From: Monocercomonoides exilis PA203
Taxonomy: Eukaryota > Protista > Preaxostyla
Assembly: GCA_001643675.2 (NCBI GenBank)
Contig: LSRY02000014.1
Coordinates: forward strand, 372,001 to 436,000
Direction of reading: 5' to 3'
Length of the DNA stretch: 64,000 bases
Shown here: piece by piece, positions 1-55,816 of the stretch
How the letters are laid out: the number at the start of each line of letters is the position of its first letter
Numbering within the stretch: the first letter of the stretch is position 1
Notes under the pieces: model-generated
Seen by the model: only the letters and a program-made list of their open reading frames with translations
What the model was told of the DNA's origin: nothing
Databases searched by the model: none
Position numbers and translations under genes: made by a program

Positions 1-3000
1 GAAGATGTTGATGCATCGTTCAACAAAGTTTTCCCATATTTCGTCCATTATGCGTCTCAGCTTCTAACTCTTTCTTCAGATCTTCTTGATTCAGGCATAA
101 ATGAGCTCTGCAGAATACGATATGAAAGGATACAGCTTATGAAGAAAAGAGTGAAATCAGAAGAAATGCCTGATAACCTCGGTTGCAGCTTCACTTCAAC
201 AGAAATTGATGATATTCTGATCGTTCTGAAAAAGTCAAGTGTTGGTACGTTGTGTCAATCGTTGATTTTGTTGCTGTCGCTCATCACTTCAAACTCGCCG
301 TCAGTTGCTTCTCTCATGGTCAAGCCTGTTTCTCGTTTTCTTTCGTCTTACAATAAATTCTTGAATGCATTGCTTGGGAAAGACAACGAAATGAATTTTT
401 CAGACAGCGACTCAGAGAGCATTAATGAGATTAGCAATGCTTTTGCAAAGCGTAAGTCAGATGAACTGAGCCATTCAGAACTTGCTGTCTTGAAAAAAGT
501 TACTCAGTCAATAAGTGCACCTAAGCCAACTCGCATAGAAACGAGACATCCATATGACAACGATCAGGATTGGAAGAAAACTGTGAAGGTGGATGAAGCT
601 GTTGGATACAAGTTGCACTTCAATACAAAATGCGAGACAGAAAATAAGTACGATTGGATTCGAGTATTTGAGGTTGTGCAAAAGCCGAATGGCAAAGATG
701 GAGAAGGCAGGGAACTGATGATGTGCACTGGAACCAACTTTCCAAAGAAAGACGTTCTTCTTATGAAAAAAGGCTTGGTTTTCCAATTTCACTCTGATGG
801 AAGTGGTGTTGAGTGGGGCATAGAAATCGATGTGACACCAATAATGGGAGACAAAAAGGTTGTGTCCGAATGGTACGTCCAATTGAGCTATGAAATTGCG
901 CAAATTCTGTCACTCTGCTTGAAGTGTATATGCAAGTTCGGCGTTGGAGAAAGCGCAAAAAGGGCGCATTTGAAAGGAGAAAAAGAGGAAGAAGAAGAAG
1001 ACGACGACGAAAATGCAAATAAAAAAACCGAAACTGAACCTTCTGATAAACCAGACGAGTCAACTGGCCAAGAAGAGGAAACGAATTCAGATTCTGATGA
1101 TCATTCATCCGAAGAAAGCTCACACTCCAGCCAAAATAATAACTCTGAAGGGAAGGACAAGGGAAAGGAAGAAAGTGCATCACTCTTCAGAACGTCTTAC
1201 ACAGACATCAATTTACTTTTGGAGCAGATGCGTATTGGCTCAAAAGTGAAAGGCAGATGGGAGAATGGAAGATGGCTGTGCTATGAAGATCCGTCCTCCT
1301 CTGCAAAGTCCAATCTGCGTGTTTACGTGTACGGCAAAAACGAGCTGGAAATCTGGGAAGGTTCTTTCTGCAGATCTGCGTTGCTTCTTCCTGAGGTTCA
1401 AGAAGCATGCGCAAGGCAACTATTTAGCAGAGGAGTTTCAGAGGCTGTTATTCAGTCTGTCGAAGCGGCATCGTCTTTGCTAAATAAAAACCTTTCAGTT
1501 TCTGTCGCAAAAGAATATGTCTCATCAATTGTCAAACAAGAACAATTTCTCGAAGGGAGTCGTTTGTGTGCTGAATCGATGCTTCTGAAGGAGATACTTA
1601 CAATGCCCGACTCCATCATTACAAGTTCATTGGATCTTGTTCGTGATTCAGTGAAAATAGCAGCACCTGCTTTAAAACTTCCTGAGCAGGCTAATTGCGA
1701 CACTCCTTCAACAGAACTTACTGCAAAATTGCTGATCAACAGTCTTCTCTTTGGCCCTTCTCAAACAGAAAAGCTAAAGTCAAATTACTCAAAATTGACT
1801 TCTCTCCCAACATTTGTGCCAGGCGAGCAGTTGGTCGATACGCTTTCTCTTGCTCAACCACCATTCCCAATGGGATCTCAGACAAAAGCAGCAGGAATGG
1901 AACTTCTGGGAATTGTTCTGGGAACAGTTCTTGCAGTTAGTTCGGCTGCATTAAAAGGAGCACTCGAACTCGCAAGAGATATGAGCAAGAAACTTGCGGA
2001 GAAATTTAAAGCTGCTAAAGGATCCGGAGATTTTGTATCCTCACAAACTGCGAAGGTAATGATTCCACGCCAACAAATAGATACGAACTTAATTAGAGTG
2101 TGGAGAGGATGCACGTCTGTTGTCGCTTCGCTTATCAGAGGATCACAAGATAAGAAGGGTCCAGTACTTAGCATTTTACTCGAAGAAATAAGGAGGCGAA
2201 GCTTCTTACTGATTAACAGTTGTAGATTCGACGGATTGCGTGTGATCAAAGAAGCCACAACCTCCTTTGAAGCACAGCCACCTACTGTTTCAGCAGCAAT
2301 TTCGATATCACAGCTTGGGGCAAATAAATCCAATACAGAAAAGACCGGAACACTTCAATTGTCAGCCTCTGATCTTTCTCAAGTGCTGCTATTTTTGAGG
2401 GAAGTGTCATCAGTTCAGTTCATCAGGAGTGTTCTATTTTGGCGTTTGGCAGCAAGAACAAAGACGCATTCGTTGCATCAAATCGCACACATTCTCGAAA
2501 AAGAGGATCAAAAATTCAATGGCTCTGCAGATACGTTGGCTTCATTGCTTTCGCCAATGTATCTAACAGTTTCAAATATCCCTCTTTATCAATCATTGTC
2601 GCAAATGATTTCCGAGAGCCAGGTTGGTTCACTCACCGAAGGTTTAGAATGTTCAGGCGATATGCTTTGTTCTTCTGTGAATACTGCGCTTTTCGAAGTT
2701 GGAAAGTCGTTGTTATATCAGTTGGAGAATTCTTCATGCTTGGTTGATGAGATTTGGTTGATTGTCAATGCTCAATGCGATGGCACAGAGAATTCGAAGA
2801 AAGATGCAATTTCTTCGATGGGAAATATCAATCCTTACATTCATGTGGCAGGTGAAGCCTTGGTTGTAAGATGTCATGAATTGATTGCCATTTTGGCTTC
2901 AATAAACTCAATTGTTGGCATTCTAGTGAATAAGACGAATCAATGTTTGTTCAAATCAACCAAGAATAATGATACAGCTGATGCTGAAAATGATTTCTCA

Positions 3001-41680: not shown

Positions 41681-44006
41681 TTCTAAGTCGAAAAACTTTC
41701 AAACGAAATCGAATACACCAAATATTTATCAAGATCGAAAAAGTTTAATTCAAGATCGAAAATTATTATACGAAATCGGAAAACTTTAATTCGAAATCGA
41801 AAATATTTTATTCAACATCGAAAATTCTTTATCATCAAGAAACTTGAAAAATATCATAAAATTCATTCTCATGTCAGTTTCTTTTCTTTCGGTTATTGAT
41901 CCGAGATATTTGAAATTTTCAATCAGAAAAATATTTTTTGATGTTTTTTTGGTGTTTAAGTGTGTAAAATAGCGTGAATATAATAAAATATTCATTTTTT
42001 TTTTCTTCACATGTGTTCAGGAGATTACAAGGAATATGAGCAAAAAATAAAAGTGATTGGATAGTTCATGATCTTGTTTTGTGCACAAACAGACAGAAAT
42101 TTATCATATTTATTGAATACGAAATGTTTTGAATTTCATTTACTGCATTGGAAGCTGATACAATAAAATATTTTCGTTTTTCATATTAATAAAAGAATCG
42201 ATTGTAATCAGTCTATATAATAGAAAACAGTCGTTCAAAACGAAAGAAAAACATTTCCGATAAATAAACATAAGTTATTATCAACATTTGTGTCAAAAAA
42301 TATTCTTGGTTTTAACTTGAATTGAAATTCTGAACCAATTAACTTCTTTTTCCTTTTTGAATTTTAGTTTTTCGATGTTGAATCATTTTTGGTGTAATGT
42401 TTTCAATGATGACGACTGAAATTCATTGATCCTTTTCTCATTTTGAAAATTGAAAGTGTTTTATTTTATCAGATTCAAATGTAATAAATGGGTGATTATT
42501 TTTGAAATCATAACTTTTTTCGGGGTGTCAATTTTTCATTTTCATTTGTCGGTTGGAAGAGATTTTGTATTCTATTTGAGAATTCTATGACAACTGTTTT
42601 TAAAACAAACGTTAAAGCAGAAATAAAAATCATGATAATGTTTTTCTAGCCTTTTCTCTTTTAAGTGTTCTTTTGTTTTTATAAAGGAGAAATATTCAAA
42701 CCGAAAATTTAATTAGAAATAATATAACATCAAAAATAATCACCCAAATGAAATCGAAAACATTTCGTTTCATGGAAATGAGATTTATTTCTGTCTTTTT
42801 GAACGAAAAATAATATAAATAGCGACCCTGCTTTTTTTTATTTTTTTGTGAAATAACTTTTTGTCTCCTATGTACATGTGAAGAGTTAAAAAATAATGAA
42901 TTTTTTCTTTTTCATTCTGTTGAACACAATCAAACACCATAAATGAGGGAAAATACGGACTTTGAAGCTTTTAATGCACAAAGAATGAAAAAATTGTTTC
43001 GCTTATAACTTTATTTCGCTGTCTCAGTTTTCAAAATAATGTGGATTTGCATATCTGAAAGCTGGCATCATTAAAATTAAATCATGAAGTTTTGTGACAT
43101 TTTTCGAATGTCAAAAAATAAACATATTTTTTTTGTGTTTTTTGACTTTAAAAAGTCAATAAAAAATGTATAATTTTTCACTGAAAATGCCTGAAGAGGA
43201 ATATTTTGCAACAGCTCAATTTTAAAAATTATTTTTTGAATGAATTTGATTAATTTCTCGAATCATTTACTGAAAAAATAAGAAACTGAAATGAGTGTGA
43301 ATTTTTTGATTTTTTTCAAAATTTTGGATGATAAAGAGTTTTCGATGTTGAATTAAACTTTTTAGATTTTGAATAAAACTTTTTCAATGTTTAAAACTTT
43401 TACGATTTTGAATAATTTTTGGTGTGTTTGCAAAAAAATAAAATAAAATAAAAATAAAAAACAAAACGTTTTATAAAAAGTGTTCAATCGAGAAAATTAT
43501 TGTTATTCAGTTTTTGTGAATATTATCAGCAACGTTTGTGTTGTTGTTCTCTGCGAATAAAGTAAATTTTGAACAAAAATAAACTCAAATATAAACAAGA
43601 AACAAAACTTAAAACATTTGTTTCTTTCAAAAAGAAATGAGTTTTTTTCAATGAAAAAACATGTAATAAGAGAGCCAACACTGTATTCATCATTCTTTTC
43701 AAAATTGGTTATGAAAACATAATTTTTCTATGACTAATTTTCTGTGAAGAAGTATGCTTTCAATTCAAATAAGACAATTTATCAGAATTCCTCTCATGTT
43801 TTGAAAATTTGCAATTGTTAAATTGGCAGCACAAAAACATATATGCAAAGAGATGGAAAATCATTAAAATAACAAGCATCGTTGATATTTAAACAATAAA
43901 TAAATAATTTTTTTTATTTTTTAACTTTTATTGATTTTTGTAAACTTTCAGAAAATTTTTAGTTTTTCAAATTTTCGACTTTGGTTGAAAGTTTTTCGAC
44001 TTTGAA
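41681..44006. mobile_element. Large degenerate foldback (long inverted repeat) element, interrupted by later insertions
   Basis: The left arm (~41681-42215) matches by eye the reverse complement of right-arm pieces at ~43970-44006, ~43218-43428, ~42746-42944 and ~42412-42489 (e.g. ATTCAACATCGAAAATTCTTTATCATC vs GATGATAAAGAGTTTTCGATGTTGAAT). The arms carry ~20-bp subrepeats (TTCAAGATCGAAAA). Confidence 0.7.
42490..42745. mobile_element. 256-bp MITE with GGG...CCC ends and 4-bp AAAT target-site duplication
   Basis: Perfect 16-bp TIR GGGTGATTATTTTTGA / TCAAAAATAATCACCC, AAAT on both sides (42486-42489, 42746-42749). Removing it restores the foldback arm. Confidence 0.8.
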
Positions 44007-44188
44007 TTAAACATGTGTTTCTCCTTGACTAATAACAGATAAAATTGGTTTCCTGACGGATCGAGAGATAATTTTCACTTTAGAACCTCAATTATGAAAA
44101 CAATTAATTTCAACGCTAATATTATAAAATATTAATTCAAAAAAGTGAAGAATGAAAATACGTTTTTCAAAAAAAATATTGACAAATA

Positions 44189-45003
44189 CAGTTTGCGCAA
44201 AAAATACAGGACAAGATCGATTTCTCAATAACCGCAAGAGGAATAATTCTGTTAATTTTCCTCAAAATATATCTTTTCAATACAGTCAAAACCGGATATT
44301 ATTACATCGGTTTTTGCACGACTTTTTGTGACTATATCCGATTGTGATAAAATATGATGCTGCTTAACAACGAAAAAATTGACTCAAAATACATTAACAA
44401 ATTAATTAATTTTGTGTCGATTTTTTTATTTTTGGAAATTCTGCACAAACACACTATTTTCACTTGCTTGAACATTTTTGATCATAAATACTCATAATTC
44501 AGACTTATTTGAGCATATTTTTGCAAAATCAAAAAATTCATATTTTTGATCAAAAAACCGATTTTTCATTGAAAAAATCACCCATAATAATAATAAATGT
44601 GATTATATATTTTCATCCCTGAGATAATATTCGATGGAAAATGAATGAAAAATGAGCTAAAAAGGTCGGTGCATGGAAAAATGTGACTATAAACGAATGT
44701 GATTGTATTCGATGTGATTATATCCGGTTTTGACTGTACAAACTCATTTGATATTCAAATCTTTCTGAACAACTTCATTTGCTCTCAGAAAAAATTAATG
44801 ATTAAAATCTCGGAGAAATAGGATTTTGAGTTTCTCCGAAATTTCGATATTTATTTTTTCTGAGCACAAACGAGGAAGTTTTGTAAGTCTCGTTTTTCCA
44901 ATGAGTTTGCATTAATGAAAAGTGTTTTGAGAAAAATTGATAGAATTATTCCTCTTGCAGTTATTGAGAAATCGATCTTGTCCGGGATTTTTTGTGCAAA
45001 CTG
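44189..45003. mobile_element. Tc1/mariner-type palindromic MITE (TA target duplication) carrying a nested insertion
   Basis: TA-CAGTTTGCGCAAAAAATACAGGACAAGATCGATTTCTCAATAACCGCAAGAGGAATAATTCT ... AGAATTATTCCTCTTGCAGTTATTGAGAAATCGATCTTGTCCGGGATTTTTTGTGCAAACTG-TA; the internal arms continue to a centre near 44825. Confidence 0.85.
44283..44736. mobile_element. pogo/Tigger-like MITE nested in the 44189-45003 element
   Basis: TA-CAGTCAAAACCGGATATTATTACATCG ... CGATGTGATTATATCCGGTTTTGACTG-TA (27-bp TIR, 2 mismatches, TA TSD). Confidence 0.85.
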
Positions 45004-45740
45004 TAAAAAAATTTAGAATTTCTTGATCATCGGACCGATAGTGAAGACAGCGACTGTCAGAGGAATTTGTATCTGGCAGGGAAGAAATTATTTTTTTAAT
45101 TTGTGAAACAAAGCAAAGTTTAAATAATAAAACAAAAAGAATAAATTCAAAAAAATTAACTCATTTAACGAAATCCCCAAAAATCTGCAAAAATAAATAT
45201 TAGATTTAAAAACAAACACAGACGTAGATTTTCAATTACTGACGGACAAAACAATAATTTTTTTTATCTGAAACACTTGTTCACTTTGAATAAATTTTTG
45301 CCATTTATTATTTGTAAGTTTTCTAATTTTTAAAATTATTTTTTTATTTTTATTGATATTTTTCTTTATCTATGAATAATGGAAATACAGAAATAATAAA
45401 TCGATATTCAATTAATCAAACTTTTCAAAAAGGAAAAATTGTTGAGCTGATGATAACTTTTGCTTAATGAATGAGGAATTAAATATTATAATTTATTTCA
45501 ACGTTAAAATAACAAACAATCAATTGTTCAGGTTCACGAACTTTTATATGACAAACAAATTCTCGCAAATTCAAAGTCCATTCTCATTAACATCTTAAAT
45601 TATTCATAATTAACACTCCAATAACAATTTTCATCAAAATTATTTTGTGTATTTGAAAATACCAATTGTCCAGAATTTTAAATTTGATAAAAATAAATGA
45701 CCTTCCAAAACTTCTCAAAATTTAGGAAGAAAATGAAGCC

Positions 45741-47975
45741 TCAACCATAAGTTTCCTTTTTTTGCAAAAAATGAAAGCATAAAATTTTCTTTAAAGAAAA
45801 AGAATTTTCACACTGCTTCAAAATTTCCAACTCGATCTCTCTCAGAATAGACGAATCCTTTGAAATTAAGGTTTCATATTTAATCTTGAGGTCTTGCATC
45901 TTGGATATCTTTGAATTTATAAAATTAAGTTCAGGAGTTCGGAAACGTTCCTGCAATTGTGAAAAACAAAATTTCAATTAAAAAAAGAAAAGAAAAAAAC
46001 TTTTCGGTGACAAACTATTCTGAAATTACACCATTTCTGCAAGCATTCAAGTTTTGAACTCAAAGCTTCCATCTGATGTTGAATGAAATCCAATTGTGCA
46101 CGAGCTTTTCTCGCCAAAGACAAAATTTCAGAATACTCGTAAAGAACACTTTCTTCTGAAATCTTTGAAATTCTTAACTCATTGTAAAGAATTTCCAGTT
46201 TTTGTAATAGTCCATTCGTAGTTTCAAGAAAATTTTCATTTTGAGAATTTGGAAAAACAAATGGAGAATTAGGCAAATCAGGACTAGGTGCTGGAGAAAC
46301 ATATGGAATTGGAATTAATTTATCTATCATTTTTTTCAATTGAGCATCTGTCAATTTTCTCTGTTGTACAGTTTCCATCAACAAGTACACATCAATCCAT
46401 TTTTCCAGACAATCACAATATCCACAAAGACTTATGCATTAGATCAAAATTTTTGAATTAAGATTTTTCAATTTTATTTTTTTGCTACAAATAATAAGCG
46501 TTGCTTTCAACGTTGTGAATTTCATATTAATCATTGAGCTGCCCTTTAGCATATTTCTTATCAATAGCAGAAAAAAAAAATTGAAAATTTTCTAACAATT
46601 GCACATTCGTTTCTATGAAAAATAATAACTTTGAGCTAGAAAATGGATATTTTAAAGAGCGTTTGATTTTGCTTTGAAAGTGAAAATGCTTTTCTAAATC
46701 ATTATTATGCGCTATTTCAAGGTTTTGTTATGCAAATGCTTTAAAAAAAATTCAAAAAAAAAATATTATGAATGAGAAAAAAAAATTGAAGTAAAAAATT
46801 TTAGTAGAATTATTGAACATCGATTGCTTCTGCATTAACTCTTAAATTCCGTCAATATTACTTATTGATTTCGTTGATTCGAAAATTTTCTCATTTCTTT
46901 GAACAAATTCGTGCTCTCGCAATATCGTTCCTCTTAAATCTTCGCATTCCATTCCAACAGCTTCTGAAATGAACACGTTTTCGCATCCTTTTATCCAGAT
47001 ATTTCTTGCTTTTTCCCAATTTTTTTCTTTTTCTGCAACAACACGCTTTTCCCAAGCAGCAGCCGAACGAAGATTATCAATCCTTCCATTTAACGTACTT
47101 TTTGTTATGCTTATCAAATGATTTGCTTGAGCTAACGAAAAATTAAGTTCCTATTTTTTTCAGAATGAAAAAAAAGTTAAAAGACAAAATACTGTTTCAA
47201 ACATCATTTGACTTTAATAATTTCTCGTTTTCCTTTTTTCTGAGTATTATTTCTGCAGCTTGTTTTTCCACTGTTGACTCAAGTTCCTTTAATGCATTCT
47301 CCTTTTCTTCACATATTTTCATAACTTTATCAGCTTTTTCTTCAGTCGTTTTCAATTTTTCTTCACAACGAGAACTAATAATATCGCATCCTTTGACTTG
47401 CTCCATCAATAGGCGTAATTTATTTTCGCATTGATCATGAAAATTATCCTTTTCTTTAAGTAAAATTTTCAGATGTTCAACTTCGGCTTTGGATTCGCTT
47501 AGTTGTTCGTTAATTTTACTAATCGTCTCATCTTTTTTTTGAACAAAATTCTTTAAATTATCGATATTATTTTTCAAGTTCTGAATTTCTAAATTAATAC
47601 TTTCCCTGTATTTCATAAAAAAACAAACAAGCAAAAACCTCGTTTCATCGCAACCTCACGACTCTCAGCTGTAAATTGTGCGAGTTGTGCCTTTTCTTTC
47701 AAATCTTCAAGTTCTTTTTCAAGAACATAAACAGAATGTGGCTTCAAAAAATTAAAGATCTTTAATAATGTCTTTTATTGATATTGAAATACTTTTTGTA
47801 ATGCGTAACTATGAGTTTCTTCTGATCTTAACTGATTGTTGTTGCTGCACTCACTCTGAATCTGCCCATCAATTTGATGAAAGAAATTGTTCAAAAACAA
47901 AAAAAGGTGAACAAAAACTTTTTCATGTTCTTCTATGTACCGTTTCAAGTTTTGTTTAAAAACGAAAAAATCCAT
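45741..47975 (-). CDS. Multi-exon coiled-coil protein of unknown function (3' end and exon boundaries approximate)
   Basis: A chain of short minus-strand ORFs (47775-47975, 47197-47634, 46842-47117, 45974-46390, 45741-45977) with E/K/Q/L heptad character, separated by AT-rich intron-like gaps with GT/AG ends. Confidence 0.5.
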
Positions 47976-48264
47976 TCAAAAATGTCTAATCAACGTTAAA
48001 TAAAGTTTCCAGATAATAATCATTTTAAATAAAAAATTAATGGGTTCGATCGTTATTCCGATTTTTATTGTGGAAGTCTTTTCAATTTAATTACTTCTTT
48101 TAATTTTTTCCCAGTTAATAAAATGAATCAAGTGCTATAAAACAAAGCATTTTTGAAATACATTAACTTTAATCCTAGAAAATAATAATCTTTTCAAAAT
48201 TAAAAATTACTTTAAAAGCCGTCAAAAAGTTAAAAAATAAACCAAAAACACTATGAAATGAATC

Positions 48265-51200
48265 TCACCTCTTCACATAAATAACGCTATCTTTTATTTT
48301 TTCGAAATAATCACACAGATCCATCAGTTCCTCCTCAGACGTGATCAGAAAACAGAACATCATTGATGGGTCGAGTGAAGAGAAAGGCATATGAAGCACA
48401 CGACGAGGGTAGAAAGAGGACAGAGAAGGAGAAGAAGAAAGAGGCTCTGACAGCAGCGTGGACAATGAATGAGACATTGATAAAGGAAAAGGAAAAGAAA
48501 GAGAGCGAGGAGAAGAGGAGGAAGAGGAAGGATTGGACAAGTTGGAAATGACATGTGTCGAAGAAGCAGAAGAGTTAAATGGAGAAGAAGAAGAATGAGA
48601 AGAAGATTCTTTCTTTTCGGTAGTTCCGAAGGGAGAATTGATATAATCAATAGAGAAAGGCACGGGAGGAGGCGGAGAAGGAGAATTCCGAGTATCCGAA
48701 GCATAACTGTTCAGCTGATTAGAAGAAGAAGAAGAAGAAGAAAAGGAAGAAAAGGAATTTGAAGTGGAAGAAGGAAAAATTTGGGTGCATTGCAATTGAT
48801 TAGGAGGAGGAGTCATCGAATAATCAGATTGAAAAGATGTAGAAGGCTGAAGAGGTTGAAGAACATTCAGAGAAGAAAGAGGAGGAAGAGAAGGAAGAGG
48901 AAGGGGCAAAGGAGGAGGAGGTGGTGGCGGAAGAAGAGGCATATGAGAAGGAGAAGGAGAGGAAGAATGAGGAAGTGCAGAAGAGCGGAGAAATGAAGTG
49001 GAAGAGGAAGAAGAAGAGGAAGGGGAAGAAGAAGAGGATGAAATGGAAGAAGTGAGTGGAGAAGATGCATGTTGTGTGGATGGAGAGGAGAAAAGAGAGA
49101 AAGTATGGTTTGCTGAAGTGGGAAGAGAAAAAGAAGAAGAAGAAAATGACGATGAATGAGAAGACAAGGCTGAGGTCAGCATTGGCTGAGGAGGAGGTGG
49201 CTGAGGTCTCGAAATTGCCTGGCAAGAGGAAGAATTTGAGAAAGAGGCAGAAAAAAGAGGAGAAGAAGGGGAATCAGGCGAAGGGCTTGTACGAGACTCA
49301 AACAGAGTTTCTGGATTGGACATCCACGAAGGAGAACGGGGTTGGTATGACAAGGATGATTTGGAAGAGGAAGAGGAAGAGGAAGAGGAAGACGAGGAGG
49401 AGGAAGGAAAAGGCGAAGAAGAAGAAGAAGAAGAAGAAGAAGAAGAAGAAGAAGGAAAAGGAGAATGATAATCAACTGATGATGGTATTGGAGACTTAGC
49501 TGTTTGTGGAGTATTAGAGAAAGAAAGAGGTTGAGATGTATTCATTGAATCAGATGAATGAGAGACGGAATTTCTTGGAGTGGTCGAATGATTCAGAGAA
49601 GAGGAAATGGCTGACTCGAGTGCTTTTGTGCTGAATGGCTGGACAAAAGAATTCTGAATAGACACATTTTGAGAGGAGCTGCATTCAATCAGAGGTTGAG
49701 GGGGAAAGCAAGCTGAGTAACAGCTTTGATTGGATAGACGAGATTCTTCTATTCTCTTTGCTGGCATCAGACTTGCACTCAGTTTAGTCGCATCTGAATG
49801 GTTCAGCTGAAATCCATCTTTATTGCTCATTTTCTTCTTGATAACTCCTTCTCCATTTCTTTCTCTTTCTCTTTCTCTTTCTCTTTCTCTTTCTCTTTCT
49901 CTTTCTCTTTCTCTTTCTCTCTCCTTCTCCTTCTCCTTCTCTTTCCCCTTCCTCCCCTCTTCGTTCCTACCCCACCTAACCTCCGCACACTTCTGTGTTG
50001 TGTGTGGATCCAAATAATACACCTCGTCTCCTTTCCACCCAACAAACCAGAAAGAGGAACGAGGTTTCCCACCCACAATGCCAACAGAGGAAGGGAAAGA
50101 AAGGGCTGCTTTGATCTGCGGAATGTACTCTTCAGTGATGCGACTGAGCCCCAGACGCACTGGAATCAGCAGAAGAACTGGGGGGAAGGGAGAAGGGAAG
50201 ATGTATGAGTGAGAAGAAGAAGAGGAGGATGAGGATGATGATGATGATGATGAAGGAGAGGAGGAAGACGTTGGATGAGGAAGGGTTGGAGTTTTAGAGA
50301 GAGGTTGGGTTGATGTTTTTGAATGGAATGGAACAGACTCATGTGCTTGCAATGGATCAGGGTTCAAATGATTTGAGAGGCAATTTGCGCTCTTCTGTTG
50401 GGAAGAAGACGGACAGCCAACTTCACATGAAATTCCTGTTTTATTTGTTCGCTTCGATTTTGCTGACTTTATTCGTTTTTTCTTTGATTTCGAAGAAGAA
50501 GAAGAAGAAGAAGAAGAAGAAGAAGAAGAAGAAGAAGAAGAAGAAGCTGATGATTTTGGAGAATTGTTTCTTTTTGCTGACAGTTTTGAGCTGAAAAGAT
50601 TGGACAGCCTGTTTATTCTATGTGTGTCTTTCTCAGAGACAGTTCTGATGTTAATTGCCTTCGATGCAAAAGAAGAAGAAGAAGAAGAAGAAGAAGAAGA
50701 AGAAGAAAGAGAAGCAACAGCAGAAGAAGAAATTGCTGATGAAGAAAAAGTTTCATTTGAAGAAATATTCGAAGCAGCAGGAGAGACAGCTAAAGAAGAT
50801 GGCTGAATGTCAGATGACAGGGCAAATCTTGCATCGTCTGAAGAAGCCAGAGAAGGGGCAGCAACACCAGCTGAGGGCAAATAGGAGAAGGAGCGGTGGC
50901 TGAAGGAGTTGTGGAGGGAAAGCGGGATGAAAGGAAGAAGCGAAGAAAGCGGAAGGACGGGCGGAGATGAGAAGCAGAGGCATTTTGTGGGAGGCTGAGA
51001 AAGCGCAGGAAAACTGGGCAGATTGTGAAGAGTGTTTAGAGAAGAAGAAGAAGAAGAAGAAGAGGCAGAAATCTTCCAGTTGATAGGAGAACAGGAAGTT
51101 GCAATGGAATTTGACTGATTTGTCAGAAATAGATCAGACTGATATGATTGAAGAGGGGTTGGAATGTCTTTGTCAGCAGCATCAGAAAAGCTGTTGATTG

Positions 51201-53478
51201 AGCTGTCTTCCTTGACCAAGTTAAAACTTCTTGTTCTTTCATTGTTTGTTGAATTAATCTTAAATCTTCTGTTTCTTTCTGAAGAAACACTATTCAACTG
51301 ATCTTCATCATTCACTCCCTCTGAACATTCGTAAAAGTCTCTTCCTAATTCATCTTCATCTTCGTCTTCTTCACATTCTTCTTCATCCCCTTTCACACCC
51401 TCCTCCTCAGACTCTTCCTCTTCCTCATCCGTTCTGCTTGCATTGCAATAGAAATCTTCCTCATTCGCTTCAATCACTTCTGCCCCTTCGAATTCATCAT
51501 CCAGCTCTTCAAATTCCTCATCGAGAGCATCACAACACTTCGTCTTCTTCTCCGTCATTGGTTGTATCCCTCCTTTCTTTTTGTCTGTTTTTACTTTTCC
51601 TTCTCTTTCACTTACACCACTCGCATTATTAATACCTGATTTCTTCTCTGTTTTTTCGCCATCTCTTCTCTTTTTGTACATTTCAGTCAAATCCAACTCT
51701 CCACTCGTCAGTGCATTCAACATGATGCTGTTTGCCATGTCTACCTCAAAGTCTGGTATAGTCACCAAATCATACTCATCTTCTTCATCCACCTTGTCTG
51801 CGACTGTCTTGTCATTTTCTTCTTCTTCATCATCGTCTTCATCCTCCTCATCTTCATCATCTTCTTCTTCCTCCCCTTCCTCACTTTCTTCTCCTTCTTC
51901 ATTGGATTCTTCGTATTCTTCGCCCTCTTCTCCTTCCTCTCCTTCACCTTCCTCTTCCTCCTCTTCCTCCTCGACTTCTCCCTCTTCCCCCTCTTCATCT
52001 TCATATTCGCTCTCTTCTTCACTCTCGTCATTGCCATCCTTTTTCTCAAGCACATCATTTTGCTGCACAACAACTTTCACATTTTCAAATGGAGTGTTCG
52101 CCAGCCTGCTTTGTGACTGAGCAGATGCCATTGAATTTGACTTTTCCGAAAGAATTCCATTTTCCAATCCCTTTTTCGTTGATATGCAAACATCCAATTC
52201 TGCTTGACTGGCATTTGCGTCTTTTTCTTTCTTGTAGCAGATGCACTTGTATTCTTCTTCTGCATCGTCGTCATCACTCAGAATCAGAACACCATCGTCT
52301 GTTTCATCTCCTTCTCCACAGCTTTCTTCTGAACTGATATCCGCTTTCTGTGATTGAAGCAAAATACCCAAGCCGAGCTTTGCTACTGGTGTGTCCTGTT
52401 TTTGAATAAAACTAGCAGAAAACTGCGAAGAGGCAGAACTCGAGACTTGAGAAAAAGGGCAATTCGGAGGAGATGCAGGATGCTTAAATGAAGGGAATGA
52501 CAGTTTGCGCTTTTCATTCAGCGAGAAACGGCGAGATTTCTCTGAAGAAGGCAAGTTTGATGTTTCTGTTGATTGACTACGCGCTGTCTGAATCACTTCA
52601 CTTTCACATAATTTTGTAGCTATCTTTGGAATTATTGTTTGCTTACTATACTCTTTCCAATGAATGATGCGGAAAGGCGAAGGATAAAATGGATAGAATT
52701 CATTTTCTGACGAATGCGAAGAAGTTTCGGCCAGTGCAACCAAACAGAACACCTTCCTCCTGTTCTTAGGATTATGCGTGGAAGAAACAATGTCATAATG
52801 GCTTACAACACAGCTATAATGTGAATAGTATGACGAAAGTGTTTCCATCAATCCTTCTTCAGTGACTTTTGGAAAGGCTAATAAACTCTTGCTTTTGTTA
52901 CGCAATTCTGATTCACGTTTGATTTTTTGTGCAAGCGCTCTGAGACAAATGATTGAATTTCTGCAAGGTACCACAATTGGCAATGAACGGTGATGATGGT
53001 GATTGACCAAACGTTCGACAATTATAGAACTTTCTGCAGGAGATAACCATGATCCAATTTTCTTTTTAAGTTTTTCACCTGCCATGGAAATGTTGTGAAT
53101 TGAAAATGGAGCATTTGGATCATCAAGAAAAAGTGGGACAATTTCTTGGTCCAAAATGGTATTCTCCTTTTCAGAACTTATTCCTCTTTGAATGACCGCA
53201 ATGCGCTTTATAGTTTCTGCGAGCATCATCTGAGTTGTGCGATGAACGCAACCCCATCCTCGATCAGAAGTTTTCTTTGTTTGTCCAATAGATTGAAAAT
53301 TTTTTCGATAAGTAAATTGAAGAAGAGACTTATATAGCCCAGAAAAATGCTGCATAGGATCAGGGCAACTGATATAAGTTTTTGTGATTGTTGGTTCATC
53401 CGAATTAACGAGAACTCGTCCATTAAACCAAATTGCTGTTTGCATGCGAAAAATAATTTTGTAAAAAGCAAACACCAA
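48265..53478 (-). CDS. ATG4: Autophagy cysteine protease Atg4 (peptidase C54) with very large low-complexity insertions; exact start uncertain
   Basis: 'FTYRKNF', 'SDRGWGCVHRTTQMMLAE' (catalytic Cys, 53248-53250), 'PFSIHNI', 'IGSWLSP', 'LLLIPVRLG', 'SVGIVGGKPRSSFWFVG...YYLDPHTTQ' (Asp/His near 50010), 'SLDPSMMFCF'. Confidence 0.9.
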   Translation of the reverse strand: MVFAFYKIIFRMQTAIWFNGRVLVNSDEPTITKTYISCPDPMQHFSGLYKSLLQFTYRKNFQSIGQTKKTSDRGWGCVHRTTQMMLAETIKRIAVIQRGISSEKENTILDQEIVPLFLDDPNAPFSIHNISMAGEKLKKKIGSWLSPAESSIIVERLVNHHHHRSLPIVVPCRNSIICLRALAQKIKRESELRNKSKSLLAFPKVTEEGLMETLSSYYSHYSCVVSHYDIVSSTHNPKNRRKVFCLVALAETSSHSSENEFYPFYPSPFRIIHWKEYSKQTIIPKIATKLCESEVIQTARSQSTETSNLPSSEKSRRFSLNEKRKLSFPSFKHPASPPNCPFSQVSSSASSQFSASFIQKQDTPVAKLGLGILLQSQKADISSEESCGEGDETDDGVLILSDDDDAEEEYKCICYKKEKDANASQAELDVCISTKKGLENGILSEKSNSMASAQSQSRLANTPFENVKVVVQQNDVLEKKDGNDESEEESEYEDEEGEEGEVEEEEEEEEGEGEEGEEGEEYEESNEEGEESEEGEEEEDDEDEEDEDDDEEEENDKTVADKVDEEDEYDLVTIPDFEVDMANSIMLNALTSGELDLTEMYKKRRDGEKTEKKSGINNASGVSEREGKVKTDKKKGGIQPMTEKKTKCCDALDEEFEELDDEFEGAEVIEANEEDFYCNASRTDEEEEESEEEGVKGDEEECEEDEDEDELGRDFYECSEGVNDEDQLNSVSSERNRRFKINSTNNERTRSFNLVKEDSSINSFSDAADKDIPTPLQSYQSDLFLTNQSNSIATSCSPINWKISASSSSSSSSLNTLHNLPSFPALSQPPTKCLCFSSPPVLPLSSLLPFIPLSLHNSFSHRSFSYLPSAGVAAPSLASSDDARFALSSDIQPSSLAVSPAASNISSNETFSSSAISSSAVASLSSSSSSSSSSSSFASKAINIRTVSEKDTHRINRLSNLFSSKLSAKRNNSPKSSASSSSSSSSSSSSSSSSSSKSKKKRIKSAKSKRTNKTGISCEVGCPSSSQQKSANCLSNHLNPDPLQAHESVPFHSKTSTQPLSKTPTLPHPTSSSSPSSSSSSSSSSSSSSHSYIFPSPFPPVLLLIPVRLGLSRITEEYIPQIKAALSFPSSVGIVGGKPRSSFWFVGWKGDEVYYLDPHTTQKCAEVRWGRNEEGRKGKEKEKEKERERERERERERERERERERERNGEGVIKKKMSNKDGFQLNHSDATKLSASLMPAKRIEESRLSNQSCYSACFPPQPLIECSSSQNVSIQNSFVQPFSTKALESAISSSLNHSTTPRNSVSHSSDSMNTSQPLSFSNTPQTAKSPIPSSVDYHSPFPSSSSSSSSSSSSSPFPSSSSSSSSSSSSSSKSSLSYQPRSPSWMSNPETLFESRTSPSPDSPSSPLFSASFSNSSSCQAISRPQPPPPQPMLTSALSSHSSSFSSSSFSLPTSANHTFSLFSSPSTQHASSPLTSSISSSSSSPSSSSSSSTSFLRSSALPHSSSPSPSHMPLLPPPPPPPLPLPLPSLPPLSSLNVLQPLQPSTSFQSDYSMTPPPNQLQCTQIFPSSTSNSFSSFSSSSSSSNQLNSYASDTRNSPSPPPPVPFSIDYINSPFGTTEKKESSSHSSSSPFNSSASSTHVISNLSNPSSSSSSPRSLSFPFPLSMSHSLSTLLSEPLSSSPSLSSFYPRRVLHMPFSSLDPSMMFCFLITSEEELMDLCDYFEKIKDSVIYVKR
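49857..49920. repeat. (TTTCTC)n hexamer microsatellite encoding (ER)n in Atg4
   Basis: Tandem repeat read directly; translates as ERERERER on the minus strand. Confidence 0.9.
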
Positions 53479-53830
53479 AATGCAATTTTATGTTTCTCGC
53501 AAATTCTGAATGTACAAAGCCAGAAGAAATAAATAAGTTATGAAATATGAAAATAAAAGAAATATGGTTGAGAAATATTTTTCTTTTCTTTAATCTTTGC
53601 ATTACTGTTTCACTACTTATTCTGAATAGAAATAAAATTTATATTTTATACTGAACAAAAAATATAGAATAAAATTGAACATATAAAAATATTTTAAAAA
53701 TTATAAGAATTAGAACTTTATAATAAAAATGCATGAACAAAAAGTGAAACAGATGTATTAAAATCAAACAACACAAAAACAGCAAATCAAAGTTTGAAAA
53801 GATTTACCATTCAAGGGTTTCAAAAGAGAT

Positions 53831-55816
53831 TCAAACAGCATTATTCGATTCTTTTGAATTGTTTTCAACGGAATTAGATGTCTTTATATGTGAAAGTTGA
53901 GATGACAAAGAAGATCCTTTTTCTGCTTCTTCATTAGTTATTTCTCCAATGCTACCTTTCTTTTCTTCATCATTATTTTCTTTCCTTTCATTTTCAATGA
54001 TTTCTTTTTCATGTTCATTGACTTCACTTGACTCAGTTCTCATCACTTCTTTGGAAACATCATCCTCATTTTTCTCTTCCTCTTTTTCTCTCTTATCAGA
54101 TGCTTCTGCATTATTTTCTTCTGTTTTATCTTCATTCTCCATCTCATTCTGTTGTTCACCACTTCCACTCTCTTGGCTCTTATCCTCTTCGCTTTCCACT
54201 TCCTGTGAATATGCTCTTCTCCTTCGTCTCGGCTGTGCCGATTTGTCCTTTTTGAACTTTGGAAGAGTGCATGTGTCATGCACAATTCCTGTAAAGTCTA
54301 TTTTCTTCGGAGAGATAAGCATCACAAGAGCAATGCCAGCCACCAGAGCAGCCAAGCACGAGCAGCAGCACCATTTGCAACCAGGACACGGGGCAACAGC
54401 TGCACATGTCACACGCGAAAGAGGGTTGTTTCTGAATGACGAAGGAGAAGACGACGAATCCACAAGTGGGAAGGCTACAGAAAGAGATGGGCGAAGAGAC
54501 ATCGAAGACGGATCAGCAAATGTAGTGATGTACGAAGGCACAGCTTGGCTGCTTGAGGAAAGTGCAACATCTCCTTCAAACTGGGTGGAAATTGAGGAAG
54601 AAGAAGCAGACAATGAGGAGAGCTGAGACGGCGGAACGATTCCTTCGACAAACGATGGACTGAAGTGAAATGAAAGACCGCTCCACTTTCCATCTGCACC
54701 CTCAGACTCTTCCAAAGCTGAATCCTTTGCGCTATTTGCTGTCTGAGCTTTCTTCATCTTCTCCATCTTTTCCTTCCGCCTCTTGCTTTGGACGTGCTGA
54801 TCGTGCACTCTGTCGAAATCCGGTCTAAACGCAACAGGAAACGACCCGCTTGCGTCTGTCAGCACAGGAAACTCTTGAACAGCAACAGAAGCGGACTCAG
54901 ATGAAATGACTGAATTGGCAGCATTTTTAGCGCTGGCGCTTCCGGCATCGCCTGCTGCTCCTTCTTCCAGCAACCCCTTTTCTTTCAGCTTCTCTTCGAT
55001 AACGCTGCTTCCTCCTTCCTCAACAGTCTTTGGCTTGTACTTCATCATCGACGCAAAGTAGCAACCGCTAAATGCTCCAGCAATCAACAAGCTGAGAAGA
55101 AGAAGCATCACAACTCCATTTTTCTGTGTGACCACGCCCTTCAGTGAAGGATCATCGGTGCATGCTCTCACGACAAGCGTAAAACATATAATAAGGCAAA
55201 ATGCTGCGACCAGTGAATCAATTGCTGTAAGGCCGTGAATGGTCCATCCGAGATATCCGCCTGATCCAATCATAATTACAGCCAAAATCTTATTTAGCCA
55301 ATGGAAGAATTTTGATGTCTTTTTTTGAATGGCTTGAAGCACTCCTTGCCCAAATAGCGTAAACAGTATCGCAGGCGCTATCATACCGAGAGCAAATAAA
55401 ATCATCTGTATAATTAATTCTGGACCATGAAACATTGTAACAAGAATTCCAAGATACGGAATTGTGCAAGGATTAAATGTGACCAGCAAAGAGAAAGCAA
55501 TTCCAAGGCAAAATGTATTTTTAAATAAAGGTAAAGTCATTGGAGACATTTTACCAATGAGTGACTGAAAGCCCATGGTAATGAATAATAATCCAAGTCC
55601 AAGTCTAAAGCCATTACTGAAGCTGGAATTCAAAAGCTGCTGCAAGAAAAATGACATGACAACAAAAGTTGTTAAAAACCCAAGGACTAGAAAGAAGATG
55701 CTCATAAAATTACGTTTGCCTTTTTCCAAAAATCTCACCATTAAAAGAGGAATAAGAATGATAACACATGGAGACAGTGCAGCGGAGACTCCTGCAGGAA
55801 ACGCAAACAAAAACAT
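53831..55816 (-). CDS. ccdA: CcdA/DsbD-beta family transmembrane thiol-disulfide electron carrier with C-terminal extension
   Basis: 'AFPAGVSAALSPC17VIILIP', 'FLVLGFLTTFVVM', 'LGIAFSLLVTFNPC117TIPYLGIL', 'LFALGMIAPAILF', 'LNKILAVIMIGSG' reproduce the CcdA TM1-TM6 pattern with both Pro-Cys redox motifs intact. Confidence 0.8.
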   Translation of the reverse strand: MFLFAFPAGVSAALSPCVIILIPLLMVRFLEKGKRNFMSIFFLVLGFLTTFVVMSFFLQQLLNSSFSNGFRLGLGLLFITMGFQSLIGKMSPMTLPLFKNTFCLGIAFSLLVTFNPCTIPYLGILVTMFHGPELIIQMILFALGMIAPAILFTLFGQGVLQAIQKKTSKFFHWLNKILAVIMIGSGGYLGWTIHGLTAIDSLVAAFCLIICFTLVVRACTDDPSLKGVVTQKNGVVMLLLLSLLIAGAFSGCYFASMMKYKPKTVEEGGSSVIEEKLKEKGLLEEGAAGDAGSASAKNAANSVISSESASVAVQEFPVLTDASGSFPVAFRPDFDRVHDQHVQSKRRKEKMEKMKKAQTANSAKDSALEESEGADGKWSGLSFHFSPSFVEGIVPPSQLSSLSASSSSISTQFEGDVALSSSSQAVPSYITTFADPSSMSLRPSLSVAFPLVDSSSSPSSFRNNPLSRVTCAAVAPCPGCKWCCCSCLAALVAGIALVMLISPKKIDFTGIVHDTCTLPKFKKDKSAQPRRRRRAYSQEVESEEDKSQESGSGEQQNEMENEDKTEENNAEASDKREKEEEKNEDDVSKEVMRTESSEVNEHEKEIIENERKENNDEEKKGSIGEITNEEAEKGSSLSSQLSHIKTSNSVENNSKESNNAV

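What the first reader, a model, noticed from the sequence alone, without database searches (positions are those of the whole stretch)
53831..55816. Prokaryote-type CcdA electron carrier with its own CxxC tail in a eukaryote with no obvious use for it
Seen: an intronless gene with intact SPC17 and NPC117 motifs, starting directly at TM1 with no transit peptide, flanked by the eukaryotic genes ATG4 and a nucleoporin. Two more TM helices, a Ser-rich linker and 'CAAVAPC477PGC480KWCCCSC' plus a final TM follow the CcdA core. Established: CcdA/DsbD-beta passes electrons from cytosolic thioredoxin across a membrane; in eukaryotes it is known mainly from the thylakoid cytochrome c maturation system, and the ER membrane carrier of cytosolic reducing power is unresolved. 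Inference: if the host is a plastid- and mitochondrion-free anaerobe, this could be a laterally acquired ER or plasma-membrane disulfide-reduction relay with a fused redox acceptor.
Basis: partly seen in the sequence, partly recalled or inferred. Interest (0 to 1): 0.85.

Follow-up and report, generated by a model that had tools for sequence, protein, structure and literature searches.

The report
Nine-helix CcdA-like thiol relay, oxymonad
A mitochondrion-free protist expresses a membrane protein related to the bacterial CcdA/DsbD electron carriers that has three extra helices and a conserved outward-facing cysteine cluster. The same design occurs in tiny DPANN archaea and a few other eukaryotes, so it is probably a new class of transmembrane disulfide reductase unrelated to cytochrome c.

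Summary
Window 53831-55816 (-) is an intronless, transcribed 661-aa gene of Monocercomonoides exilis. It has Pro-Cys motifs at C17 and C117, nine predicted TM helices and a cysteine cluster (C471, C477, C480, C483) at the start of TM9.

The single sequence misses Pfam DsbD_TM. Profile evidence still places it in the DsbD/CcdA superfamily: hhalign 99.8% against 14 bona fide DsbD_TM proteins, and solved CcdA 5vkv is the only PDB sequence hit and the best fold match.

The tail is not a eukaryotic add-on. About 100 representative proteins share the whole architecture. They come from DPANN (Woesearchaeota/Nanoarchaeota) archaea, from Preaxostyla, Thecamonas and Paulinella, and from unnamed eukaryotic contigs that carry mitochondrial markers. 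C17, C117, C471, C477 and C480 are invariant in 69 aligned members.

Eukaryotic members form one clade (UFBoot 96 / SH-aLRT 90) nested among archaeal forms, so a recent oxymonad-specific transfer is unlikely.

In 7 of 13 archaeal loci a leaderless thioredoxin gene sits next to the gene. Charge bias (K+R 17.3 versus 3.2) puts the cluster outside the cytoplasm. No cytochrome c or CcsA-type assembly genes were found in M. exilis or in five archaeal hosts.

Best reading: a thioredoxin-fed transmembrane disulfide relay with a built-in acceptor. Function, membrane and substrates are untested.

The parts
53831..55816 (-). Complete intronless CDS, 661 aa plus stop
   Evidence: ORF list. RNA-library contigs tile 53826-55795 without joints and none covers the flanks. 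The ortholog P0002 starts with the same N-terminal residues.
55232..55816 (-). CcdA-like six-helix core (residues 1-195, TM1-TM6)
   Evidence: hhalign of A2 against 14 Pfam DsbD_TM proteins: 99.8%, E 2.4e-28, 187 columns. Profile against PDB: only 5vkv CcdA, E 4.1e-7. AlphaFold2 pLDDT is about 90. VIA-align to 5vkv: Z 7.4, 185 residues aligned, model range 1..195.
55766..55774 (-). S15-P16-C17, first membrane-embedded redox cysteine at a break in TM1
   Evidence: P16 and C17 are invariant in 69 sequences. C17 aligns with the TM1 Cys of CcdA. In the model the helix is interrupted at residues 13-16.
55466..55474 (-). N115-P116-C117, second membrane-embedded redox cysteine at a break in TM4
   Evidence: C117 is invariant and P116 is at least 90% conserved in 69 sequences. 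C117 aligns with the TM4 Cys of CcdA. In the model the helix is interrupted at residues 113-119.
55046..55225 (-). Extra helices TM7 and TM8 (residues 198-257), with C252 (55061-55063) at the outer end of TM8
   Evidence: Hydropathy. AlphaFold2 helices 198-220 and 232-257 with pLDDT 77-93. The equivalent Cys is invariant in 31 archaeal-type members (C245 of A3). Fold matches spanning residues 195 to about 505 resemble helical bundles, so TM7-9 probably form a sub-bundle.
54407..55045 (-). Ser-rich, disordered linker (residues 258-470), predicted non-cytosolic
   Evidence: pLDDT is mostly below 50. Length and composition vary between orthologs, and the equivalent loop is only about 30 residues in archaeal forms.
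54356..54406 (-). Cysteine cluster C471-x5-C477-P-G-C480-x2-C483 (plus C484, C485, C487), predicted on the non-cytosolic face
   Evidence: C471, C477 and C480 are invariant in 69 sequences. A fourth Cys (C483 equivalent) is invariant in 31 archaeal-type members. The topology comes from charge bias.
54308..54367 (-). TM9, the final membrane helix
   Evidence: Hydropathy peak of 2.66. AlphaFold2 helix 478-501 with pLDDT 75-91. Present in all family members.
54248..54307 (-). Juxtamembrane cytosolic motif (residues 504-523, includes C516 and a basic end), conserved in oxymonads only
   Evidence: Full-length alignment A1: conserved in the window protein and in P0002, P0003 and P0004, and absent from Paratrimastix P0005.
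53834..54247 (-). Low-complexity acidic/lysine-rich C-terminal tail (residues 524-661), predicted cytosolic
   Evidence: Mostly low pLDDT apart from one predicted helix at 579-619 (pLDDT about 50-79), and not conserved.
48265..53478 (-). Neighbouring eukaryotic gene ATG4 (context only)
   Evidence: Peptidase_C54, E 2.5e-67.

Best explanation
The gene encodes a member of a previously undescribed architectural class of the DsbD/CcdA superfamily of transmembrane thiol-disulfide electron carriers. Proposed mechanism: a cytosolic thioredoxin reduces the membrane-embedded C17-C117 pair of the six-helix core. The core then exposes that pair to the other side of the membrane, as CcdA and DsbD-beta do. 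The electrons pass to the protein's own cysteine cluster (C252 at the end of TM8; C471, C477, C480, C483 at the start of TM9). TM8 and TM9 hold this cluster at the non-cytosolic membrane surface. The cluster takes the place of the separate thioredoxin-like acceptor (ResA, CcsX, HCF164, or DsbD-gamma) and reduces luminal or extracellular disulfides, or oxidised thiols. In M. exilis the membrane must belong to the secretory pathway (ER, Golgi, plasma membrane or endosomes), and the role has nothing to do with cytochrome c. Shown: superfamily homology, conservation of the five cysteines, the nine-helix architecture, transcription, absence of a cytochrome c system, thioredoxin synteny in archaea, and a single eukaryotic clade. 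Inferred: direction of electron flow, the cluster's role as acceptor, the membrane and the substrates.
For: Homology: PDB phmmer finds only CcdA 5vkv. Profile A2 against PDB gives E 4.1e-7 with both Cys aligned. hhalign against 14 proteins that all pass Pfam DsbD_TM gives 99.8%, E 2.4e-28. Family members P0008 and P0010 pass the DsbD_TM gathering score. The nearest ESM Atlas clusters by features are CcdA/DsbD_TM clusters, apart from one unannotated one. Fold: 5vkv is the top match for both models, and TM1 and TM4 are broken at the Pro-Cys motifs. Conservation: C17, C117, C471, C477 and C480 are invariant in 69 sequences, and seven Cys are invariant in 31 archaeal-type members. Topology: mean K+R is 17.3 in the predicted cytoplasmic loops and 3.2 in the outer loops over 58 members, with the same pattern in the window protein. 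Electron donor: a thioredoxin or glutaredoxin-like gene of 107-121 aa lies next to the gene in 7 of 13 archaeal loci, 6 of them directly upstream on the same strand. Its CxxC starts at residue 14, so it has no leader. Not cytochrome c: no Cytochrom_C or Cytochrom_C_asm in M. exilis or in five DPANN hosts, with positive controls. M. exilis has 45 thioredoxin-domain matches, including small ~105-aa forms and PDI-like multi-domain frames. Precedent for CcdA acting outside cytochrome c maturation: the CcdA to Trx-like lipoprotein to MsrAB pathway in S. gordonii (PMC7034828).
Against: There is no biochemical or localisation evidence. The single sequence fails Pfam and NCBIfam thresholds. No tool gave model coordinates, so the distance between the cluster and the C17/C117 site was never measured. 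The split-chain docking test gave no verdict. A spacing of C-x5-C-x2-C-x2-C plus a fifth Cys is also what a metal or Fe-S site looks like. No known DsbD-superfamily member uses a short non-thioredoxin peptide as acceptor. Thioredoxin synteny is seen only in archaeal relatives and in 7 of 13 loci.
Confidence: 0.6

Rival explanations
1. Metal handling. The outward-facing cluster of four to five cysteines binds a metal (Cu, Zn, Cd, Hg) or an Fe-S cluster. The protein would then be a metal transporter, a sensor or a metal-dependent electron conduit, not a pure thiol-disulfide relay.
For: The cluster spacing C-x(2-8)-C-x2-C-x2-C plus a conserved Cys at the end of TM8 resembles metal-ligand motifs. 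Atlas structure neighbours include LysE and TerC transporter clusters. ScsB, another DsbD-class protein, was found through copper tolerance (PMC3322552).
Against: The two Pro-Cys motifs that define redox-active DsbD/CcdA proteins are invariant. The closest sequence and fold relatives are CcdA, not the metal transporters of the clan. Recurrent thioredoxin synteny points to disulfide exchange. In the non-Preaxostyla eukaryotic clade the fourth cluster Cys is often missing, leaving C...CxxC.
Confidence: 0.15
2. Origin rival. The gene is a recent lateral acquisition from a prokaryote by the oxymonad or Preaxostyla lineage, linked to its anaerobic, organelle-poor lifestyle.
For: The best non-eukaryotic scores are to archaeal proteins of about 300 aa (E about 1e-56). 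The Preaxostyla cluster motif C-x5-CPxC-x2-C looks more like the archaeal four-Cys form than the C[IV]D...CxxC form of other eukaryotes. The eukaryotic distribution is patchy. The window copy has no introns.
Against: In the careful ML tree all 18 eukaryotic rows form one clade (UFBoot 96, SH-aLRT 90, in 92% of 200 bootstrap trees), with Preaxostyla sister to the other eukaryotes. The other eukaryotes include aerobes with mitochondria: Thecamonas, Paulinella and a contig with Tom22. The gene is present in free-living Paratrimastix and has duplicated in oxymonads, and the M. exilis paralog carries three introns.
Confidence: 0.12
3. Conventional CcdA that serves cytochrome c maturation, or a decaying relic of that system.
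For: Automatic source names call relatives 'cytochrome c biogenesis protein CcdA'.
Against: No Cytochrom_C or Cytochrom_C_asm (CcsA/CcmF) matches in the 82-Mb genome or in five archaeal hosts, while nine control genomes ring. Oxymonads lack mitochondria (PMC10703272). The gene is transcribed, its key residues are intact, and it is duplicated and conserved across Preaxostyla.
Confidence: 0.02
4. Assembly contaminant or chimera from an associated prokaryote.
For: None beyond the prokaryote-like domain.
Against: The gene lies 53.8-55.8 kb into the window, which itself begins at base 372,001 of contig C8, next to ATG4. Its GC content is 42%, against 42% for ATG4 and 39% for the window. It has eukaryote-style low-complexity inserts. 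Orthologs occur in three other Preaxostyla genomes. An intron-bearing paralog exists, and there is RNA coverage.
Confidence: 0.01

Closest known systems
CcdA (six-helix class of the DsbD superfamily; solved Thermus thermophilus CcdA, PDB 5vkv)
   Same: Homologous six-helix core. The Pro-Cys motifs in TM1 and TM4 align. It is the best and only PDB sequence hit and the best fold match. The inferred orientation is also N-terminus-out.
   Different: Three additional helices and a conserved extracytoplasmic cysteine cluster. No separate thioredoxin-like acceptor is evident. No link to cytochrome c. The sequence is too divergent to pass Pfam DsbD_TM on its own.
DsbD (alpha-beta-gamma) of E. coli
   Same: A transmembrane relay with a built-in C-terminal acceptor that carries a CxxC on the outer face. 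There are eight helices before that acceptor. The electron source is cytoplasmic thioredoxin (PMC3322552, PMC7197872).
   Different: No alpha domain. The acceptor is not a thioredoxin-fold gamma domain but a peptide of about 15 residues at the start of a ninth helix, which returns the C-terminus to the cytoplasm. Homology of TM7-8 to DsbD TM7-8 was not established.
ScsB class
   Same: DsbD-superfamily membrane core with fused periplasmic redox modules. It broadened the known substrate range to peroxiredoxin and copper stress (PMC3322552).
   Different: The ScsB-typical Lys eight residues after the first Cys is absent (L25 in the window protein). There are no alpha or gamma domains.
Plastid CCDA with HCF164/CCS5 (thylakoid)
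   Same: The only well-studied eukaryotic CcdA. It carries stromal reducing power across a membrane (PMC5526843).
   Different: Plastid CCDA is of cyanobacterial origin, has a transit peptide and six helices, and serves cytochrome f/c6 maturation. The window protein has no presequence, its host has no plastid, and it belongs to a different, archaeal-affiliated subfamily.
CcdA to Trx-like lipoprotein to MsrAB pathway of Streptococcus gordonii
   Same: Precedent for CcdA feeding extracytoplasmic repair of oxidised proteins and not heme attachment (PMC7034828). This is a plausible kind of downstream use.
   Different: It uses separate thioredoxin-like lipoproteins as acceptors. No MsrAB link was examined here.
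The unidentified ER membrane component of the mammalian cytosolic thioredoxin-reductase pathway
   Same: The same logical role: a membrane protein that passes cytosolic thioredoxin electrons into the secretory pathway, 'analogous to DsbD' (PMC7197872, PMC12781119).
   Different: The identity in mammals is unknown, with LMF1 as a candidate. At most this is an analogue in some protists.

Membership tests
DsbD/CcdA superfamily (Pfam DsbD_TM PF02683) | The sequence itself reaches the curated family threshold | tested here: not met
   No DsbD_TM, DsbD_2 or NCBIfam hit for the full protein or the N-terminal 200-240 aa, and none for any of the five Preaxostyla cores.
DsbD/CcdA superfamily (Pfam DsbD_TM PF02683) | Profile-level homology to bona fide members | tested here: met
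   hhalign of A2 against A8 gives 99.8%, E 2.4e-28, 187 columns, and all 14 A8 rows pass DsbD_TM. Profile against PDB finds 5vkv at E 4.1e-7. Subfamily members P0008 (35.5 bits) and P0010 (32.7 bits) exceed the 27.1-bit cut-off.
DsbD/CcdA superfamily (Pfam DsbD_TM PF02683) | Two conserved cysteines, each preceded by Pro, in TM1 and TM4 | tested here: met
   P16-C17 and P116-C117. C17 and C117 are invariant in 69 sequences and align to the CcdA cysteines.
DsbD/CcdA superfamily (Pfam DsbD_TM PF02683) | Six-helix core with the CcdA fold | tested here: met
   AlphaFold2 core pLDDT is about 90. 5vkv is the top match: Z 7.4, rmsd 4.3, 185 residues aligned. Foldseek probability is 1.00 for the archaeal homolog model. 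The Z values are modest because the target is an NMR structure and helical.
DsbD/CcdA superfamily (Pfam DsbD_TM PF02683) | Accepts electrons from cytoplasmic thioredoxin and moves them across the membrane | not testable with these tools
   Indirect only: a leaderless thioredoxin gene is adjacent in 7 of 13 archaeal loci, and thioredoxins are present in M. exilis.
CcdA class in the strict sense | Consists of the six-helix membrane domain only | tested here: not met
   Nine helices plus a conserved cysteine cluster, in all ~100 subfamily representatives inspected.
CcdA class in the strict sense | Co-occurs with a cytochrome c maturation system | tested here: not met
   No Cytochrom_C or Cytochrom_C_asm in M. 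exilis or in five DPANN hosts, and the controls ring.
DsbD class | N-terminal alpha domain and C-terminal thioredoxin-fold gamma domain | tested here: not met
   The protein starts in TM1. No thioredoxin-family Pfam hit anywhere in it. The post-TM8 region is disordered apart from the cluster and TM9.
DsbD class | Eight-helix beta domain | tested here: inconclusive
   Eight helices do precede the linker. However, the 5vkv and profile alignments end at about residue 195, and homology of TM7-8 to DsbD TM7-8 was not tested.
ScsB class | Conserved Lys at the eighth position after the first redox Cys (PMC3322552) | tested here: not met
   Residue 25 is Leu, and this column is Leu in all five Preaxostyla sequences.
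Plastid CCDA | Organelle-targeting presequence and a plastid host | tested here: not met
   M1 lies in TM1. The host is an oxymonad without plastid or mitochondrion (PMC10703272).

The most novel reading that the evidence does not exclude
This is a fourth architectural class of the DsbD superfamily: a CcdA core, three extra helices and a membrane-anchored cysteine cluster. It entered eukaryotes once, very early, from a DPANN-like archaeal lineage, or was inherited from the archaeal ancestor. It served as a transmembrane reductase that brought cytosolic thioredoxin electrons into the endomembrane system or to the cell surface. It survives only in scattered protists, including the one eukaryote lineage without mitochondria. 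That would make it the first identified eukaryotic membrane carrier of cytosolic reducing power outside plastids.
Probability: 0.25. Interest if true: 0.85.

Novelty: new variant of a known kind. Interest (0 to 1): 0.72.

Why it matters
[quoted passage not shown] This family would add a class whose acceptor is a short cysteine cluster built into the membrane protein itself. It occurs in genome-reduced DPANN archaea without cytochromes and in a single clade of eukaryotes.

For eukaryotic cell biology, it gives a concrete and testable candidate for a DsbD-like membrane step. Such a step has been demonstrated biochemically for the mammalian ER, but its protein is still unidentified (PMC7197872, PMC12781119). 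The candidate is found in protists only, so at most it is an analogue of the mammalian component.

For evolution, an archaeal-affiliated gene that is monophyletic across distant eukaryotes is informative whether it reflects early inheritance or eukaryote-to-eukaryote spread. In practical terms, the public gene model for this locus is N-terminally truncated and lacks the first active-site cysteine.

Tried and rejected
1. Pfam and NCBIfam scans of the whole protein, the N-terminal 200/240 aa and the five Preaxostyla cores gave no DsbD hit. Profile methods were needed.
2. Complex prediction with the core (1-262) against the cluster plus TM9 (462-522) returned no verdict: score 0.00, my alignment was not used, and the partner was poorly folded. 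It is not evidence either way.
3. The search for related loci with the 31-row alignment failed for lack of a conserved stretch. A 7-row alignment worked.
It was redone through handles.
5. VIA-align wide search on the archaeal model was dominated by trivial helical-hairpin matches to TM8-TM9. 5vkv was the only match covering the core.
6. A second word-index search with the non-Preaxostyla eukaryote alignment returned only 8 proteins and no new organism names, because low-complexity words swamped it.
7. The three cluster look-ups yielded organism names only for Paulinella and Thecamonas.
8. The ERO1 and heme-lyase searches in the genome were negative, but their controls did not ring, so they are uninformative.
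9. The genomes of the sister prokaryotic subfamily (L039, L040) are not held, so their domain was not settled.
10. Model coordinates are not exposed, so Cys-Cys distances could not be measured.
11. Literature searches found no paper combining CcdA or DsbD with Preaxostyla or Monocercomonoides, and none naming the locus tags; among the listed hits for CcdA with DPANN, Woesearchaeota or Nanoarchaeota, none mentions CcdA. One review could not be read.
12. Rejected readings: a cytochrome c maturation role, contamination, and a tail fusion made in eukaryotes.
Full report
**1. What is in the sequence**

The minus-strand ORF 53831-55816 encodes 661 aa, and M1 is the first Met of the open frame. Hydropathy and AlphaFold2 agree on the following layout:

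- Six helices in residues 1-195, with TM1 and TM4 interrupted at S15-P16-C17 and N115-P116-C117.
- Two further helices, about 198-220 and 232-257. The second ends at C252.
- A disordered Ser-rich linker, residues 258-470.
- A cysteine cluster, C471-x5-C477-P-G-C480-x2-C483 plus three more Cys.
- A ninth helix at 478-501, with pLDDT 75-91.
- A short motif conserved in oxymonads (504-523, includes C516), then a low-complexity tail.

RNA-library contigs from four runs of one study tile 53826-55795 at 100% identity. They show no joints, and none lies on the intergenic flanks. These are assembled contigs, so they show presence but not strand or transcript ends. They do argue for an intronless, expressed gene and for the 661-aa model. 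The stored annotation (P0001, 581 aa) starts at M81 and lacks C17. The upstream neighbour is ATG4. The downstream 'nucleoporin' was not confirmed.

**2. Host**

The window is C8:372001-436000 of an 82.3-Mb, 101-contig genome. The named Monocercomonoides exilis protein MONOS_632 (P0004) maps at 100% identity, in four exons, to a second locus of this genome. The host is therefore M. exilis, an oxymonad reported to lack mitochondria entirely (PMC10703272). Six-frame searches found no Cytochrom_C and no Cytochrom_C_asm (CcsA/CcmF/CcmC) domain, while nine control genomes rang. The heme-lyase and ERO1 searches were negative but had uninformative controls. The genome has 45 thioredoxin-domain matches, including small forms of about 105 aa and PDI-like multi-domain frames.

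**3. Family**

On its own the sequence misses every curated model. The only PDB sequence hit is CcdA 5vkv (E 0.016). Orthologs exist in Blattamonas nauphoetae (two), M. exilis (a paralog) and Paratrimastix pyriformis. All have the same layout, and C17, C117, C471, C477 and C480 are invariant among them.

A profile of the five cores gives the following:

- It hits 5vkv at E 4.1e-7 with both cysteines aligned.
- It aligns to 14 proteins that all pass Pfam DsbD_TM with hhalign probability 99.8%, E 2.4e-28.

Both AlphaFold2 models have 5vkv as their best core match. For the window protein: Z 7.4, 185 residues aligned, model range 1..195. For an archaeal homolog (pLDDT 88.8, pTM 0.82): Foldseek probability 1.00 and VIA Z 6.5. 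ESM Atlas neighbours are mainly CcdA/DsbD_TM clusters. Superfamily membership is secure. Membership of the six-helix CcdA class in the strict sense is not.

**4. The tail is ancestral, not a eukaryotic fusion**

An exhaustive profile search of 1.84 billion representatives found 200 proteins at E<=1e-3, 108 of them at E<=1e-10.

- *Archaeal-type forms.* The strongest non-Preaxostyla hits (E about 1e-56) are proteins of about 300 aa with the same complete architecture. They have the core, TM7, TM8 ending in a Cys, then C-x(2-8)-C-x2-C-x2-C, TM9 and a short basic tail. In 31 of them seven cysteines are invariant. Two pass the Pfam DsbD_TM threshold.
- *Who carries them.* Their contigs are archaeal, with ribosomal S6e, an archaellin and diphthamide synthase as neighbours. 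Named genomes are Woesearchaeota and Nanoarchaeota MAGs of about 1 Mb. In that phylum, 10 of 301 sampled genomes carry the nine-helix form. Another 15 matched only over the core, most in open frames of about 230-250 aa like an ordinary CcdA.
- *Other eukaryotes.* A second set of longer proteins has the motif C[IV]D-x(5-7)-C-x2-C. It includes Paulinella micropora and Thecamonas trahens (there annotated as fused to an MFS domain). It also includes contigs with plainly eukaryotic genes such as Tom22, Ras, FYVE, the proteasome, and ubiquitin/UCH/RING.
- *Conservation.* Across 69 aligned archaeal and eukaryotic members, P16, C17, P23, C117, G186, C471, C477 and C480 are invariant.

**5. Phylogeny**

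I first built a quick ML tree of 107 cores, using classic CcdA as outgroup. I then built a careful tree (LG+C20+F+G4 PMSF) of 62 rows. Fragments, near-duplicates and the classic CcdA rows were left out of the second tree.

- Preaxostyla are monophyletic (100/96).
- The other eukaryotes are monophyletic (99/94).
- All 18 eukaryotic rows form one clade (UFBoot 96 / SH-aLRT 90, in 92% of 200 bootstrap trees).
- That clade is nested among archaeal-type forms.

The domain of that sister subfamily is unsettled, since its contigs carry a bacterial-type SSB and UvrC.

The simplest reading is one entry into eukaryotes followed by loss in most lineages, with some eukaryote-to-eukaryote spread also possible. 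A duplication occurred within oxymonads (window protein plus P0002 versus P0003 plus P0004). A recent transfer into the oxymonad lineage alone is not favoured.

**6. Mechanism**

*Orientation.* Over 58 members the loops predicted to be cytoplasmic hold 17.3 K+R on average, against 3.2 in the others. The window protein shows the same pattern. This gives an N-terminus-out, C-terminus-in topology, the orientation I recall for CcdA and DsbD-beta (not re-checked in the literature here). It places the linker and the cysteine cluster on the non-cytosolic face and the basic tail in the cytosol.

*Donor.* In 7 of 13 distinct archaeal loci a thioredoxin-family gene of 107-121 aa lies next to the gene, and in 6 of those it is directly upstream on the same strand. 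One has the classic WCGPC motif and six have CPHC/CPNC. In six of the seven the CxxC begins at residue 14, so there is no room for a signal peptide, and this fits a cytoplasmic donor.

*Not heme-related.* Five host archaea, including a complete 1.1-Mb chromosome, lack cytochrome c and CcsA-type proteins.

*Geometry.* Fold matches indicate that TM8 and TM9 form a hairpin and that TM7-9 form a small bundle beside the core. This puts C252 next to the cluster.

*Proposed path.* Cytosolic thioredoxin reduces the C17/C117 pair. The electrons then pass to the C252 / C471 / C477-x2-C480 (/C483) cluster and on to luminal or surface disulfides. The last two steps are inference. I could not measure distances because no coordinates are exposed, and the docking test gave no verdict. 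The main rival is that the cluster is a metal or Fe-S site.

**7. Comparison with what is known**

The superfamily is described as three classes, DsbD, CcdA and ScsB. All of them deliver electrons to a thioredoxin-like protein or domain (PMC3322552). This family differs from each:

- It has the CcdA core but nine helices.
- It has a DsbD-like built-in acceptor but no thioredoxin fold and no alpha domain.
- It lacks the ScsB-typical Lys after the first Cys (L25).
- It is unrelated in origin and use to plastid CCDA (PMC5526843).

CcdA is already known to work outside cytochrome c maturation, for example in the MsrAB repair pathway of S. gordonii (PMC7034828). In mammalian cells a membrane protein is required to pass cytosolic thioredoxin electrons into the ER, and its identity is still unknown (PMC7197872, PMC12781119). 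The present family is a protist candidate for an analogous step, not the mammalian protein.

I found no paper that mentions CcdA or DsbD in Preaxostyla, and none that names these locus tags; among the listed hits for CcdA with DPANN archaea, none mentions CcdA. Databases only carry automatic 'cytochrome c biogenesis' names.

**8. Verdict**

This is a new architectural variant of a known kind of system. It has an unexpected distribution (DPANN archaea plus a single patchy eukaryotic clade) and a specific, testable mechanism. Function, membrane and substrates are unproven.

Operators' notes were followed. 

Noticed in passing
window 55574-55816 (-): The stored gene model for this locus (P0001, 581 aa) starts at M81. 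It omits TM1-TM2 and the active-site C17. Orthologs and RNA-library contigs that reach 55795 support the upstream start at 55816.
   Followed up: yes
L003:1519-3162 (G000 C6, about 491.3-492.9 kb): A second M. exilis copy (MONOS_632, P0004; 53% identical over the core) has four exons separated by three short introns of about 68-92 nt, whereas the window copy has none. Its annotated N-terminus begins only five residues before the first Cys and may also be truncated.
   Followed up: partly
P0045 (Thecamonas trahens AMSG_12154, 835 aa): The Thecamonas homolog is annotated as one protein in which the nine-helix unit is followed by an MFS transporter domain (Pfam MFS_1, residues 392-750, 29.9 bits, below the 33.4-bit cut-off). 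This is either a real fusion or a merged gene model.
   Followed up: no
L006:2358-2681, L020:1147-1488, L022:1142-1498 and similar archaeal loci: In several of the archaeal loci two further neighbours recur beside the trx-ccdA-like pair: an MTS-type methyltransferase of about 200 aa and an unannotated protein of about 220-260 aa. Each is seen in 5 of 13 loci.
   Followed up: partly
window 48265-53478 (-): The ATG4 (Peptidase_C54) ORF is 1,737 aa. Very long Ser-, Glu- and Pro-rich low-complexity inserts split the catalytic domain into three matched stretches.
   Followed up: no
G000 (whole genome): A six-frame search found no ERO1 domain in the M. exilis genome. The control genomes are prokaryotes, so the negative is uninformative, but it would be worth checking how this organism oxidises secretory proteins.
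   Followed up: partly
model md14ea80966a3, residues 1-195: The CcdA-like core also aligns structurally with chain A of two chloroplast translocon structures. These are the Arabidopsis TIC complex (8z9y_A: Z 5.3, 174 residues) and the Chlamydomonas TOC-TIC supercomplex (7vcf_A: Z 4.5, 176 residues). It may be only a common helical arrangement.
   Followed up: no
P0052, P0068, P0072, P0088 and relatives (sister subfamily, about 330 aa): A sister prokaryotic subfamily keeps the core and the extra helices but often lacks the cysteine cluster. Their contigs carry bacterial-type SSB, UvrC and a MurG-like gene, so these may be bacterial.
   Followed up: partly
window 42001-48000: A 6-kb stretch is markedly AT-rich (GC 24-30%), compared with about 39% for the window as a whole.
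   Followed up: no
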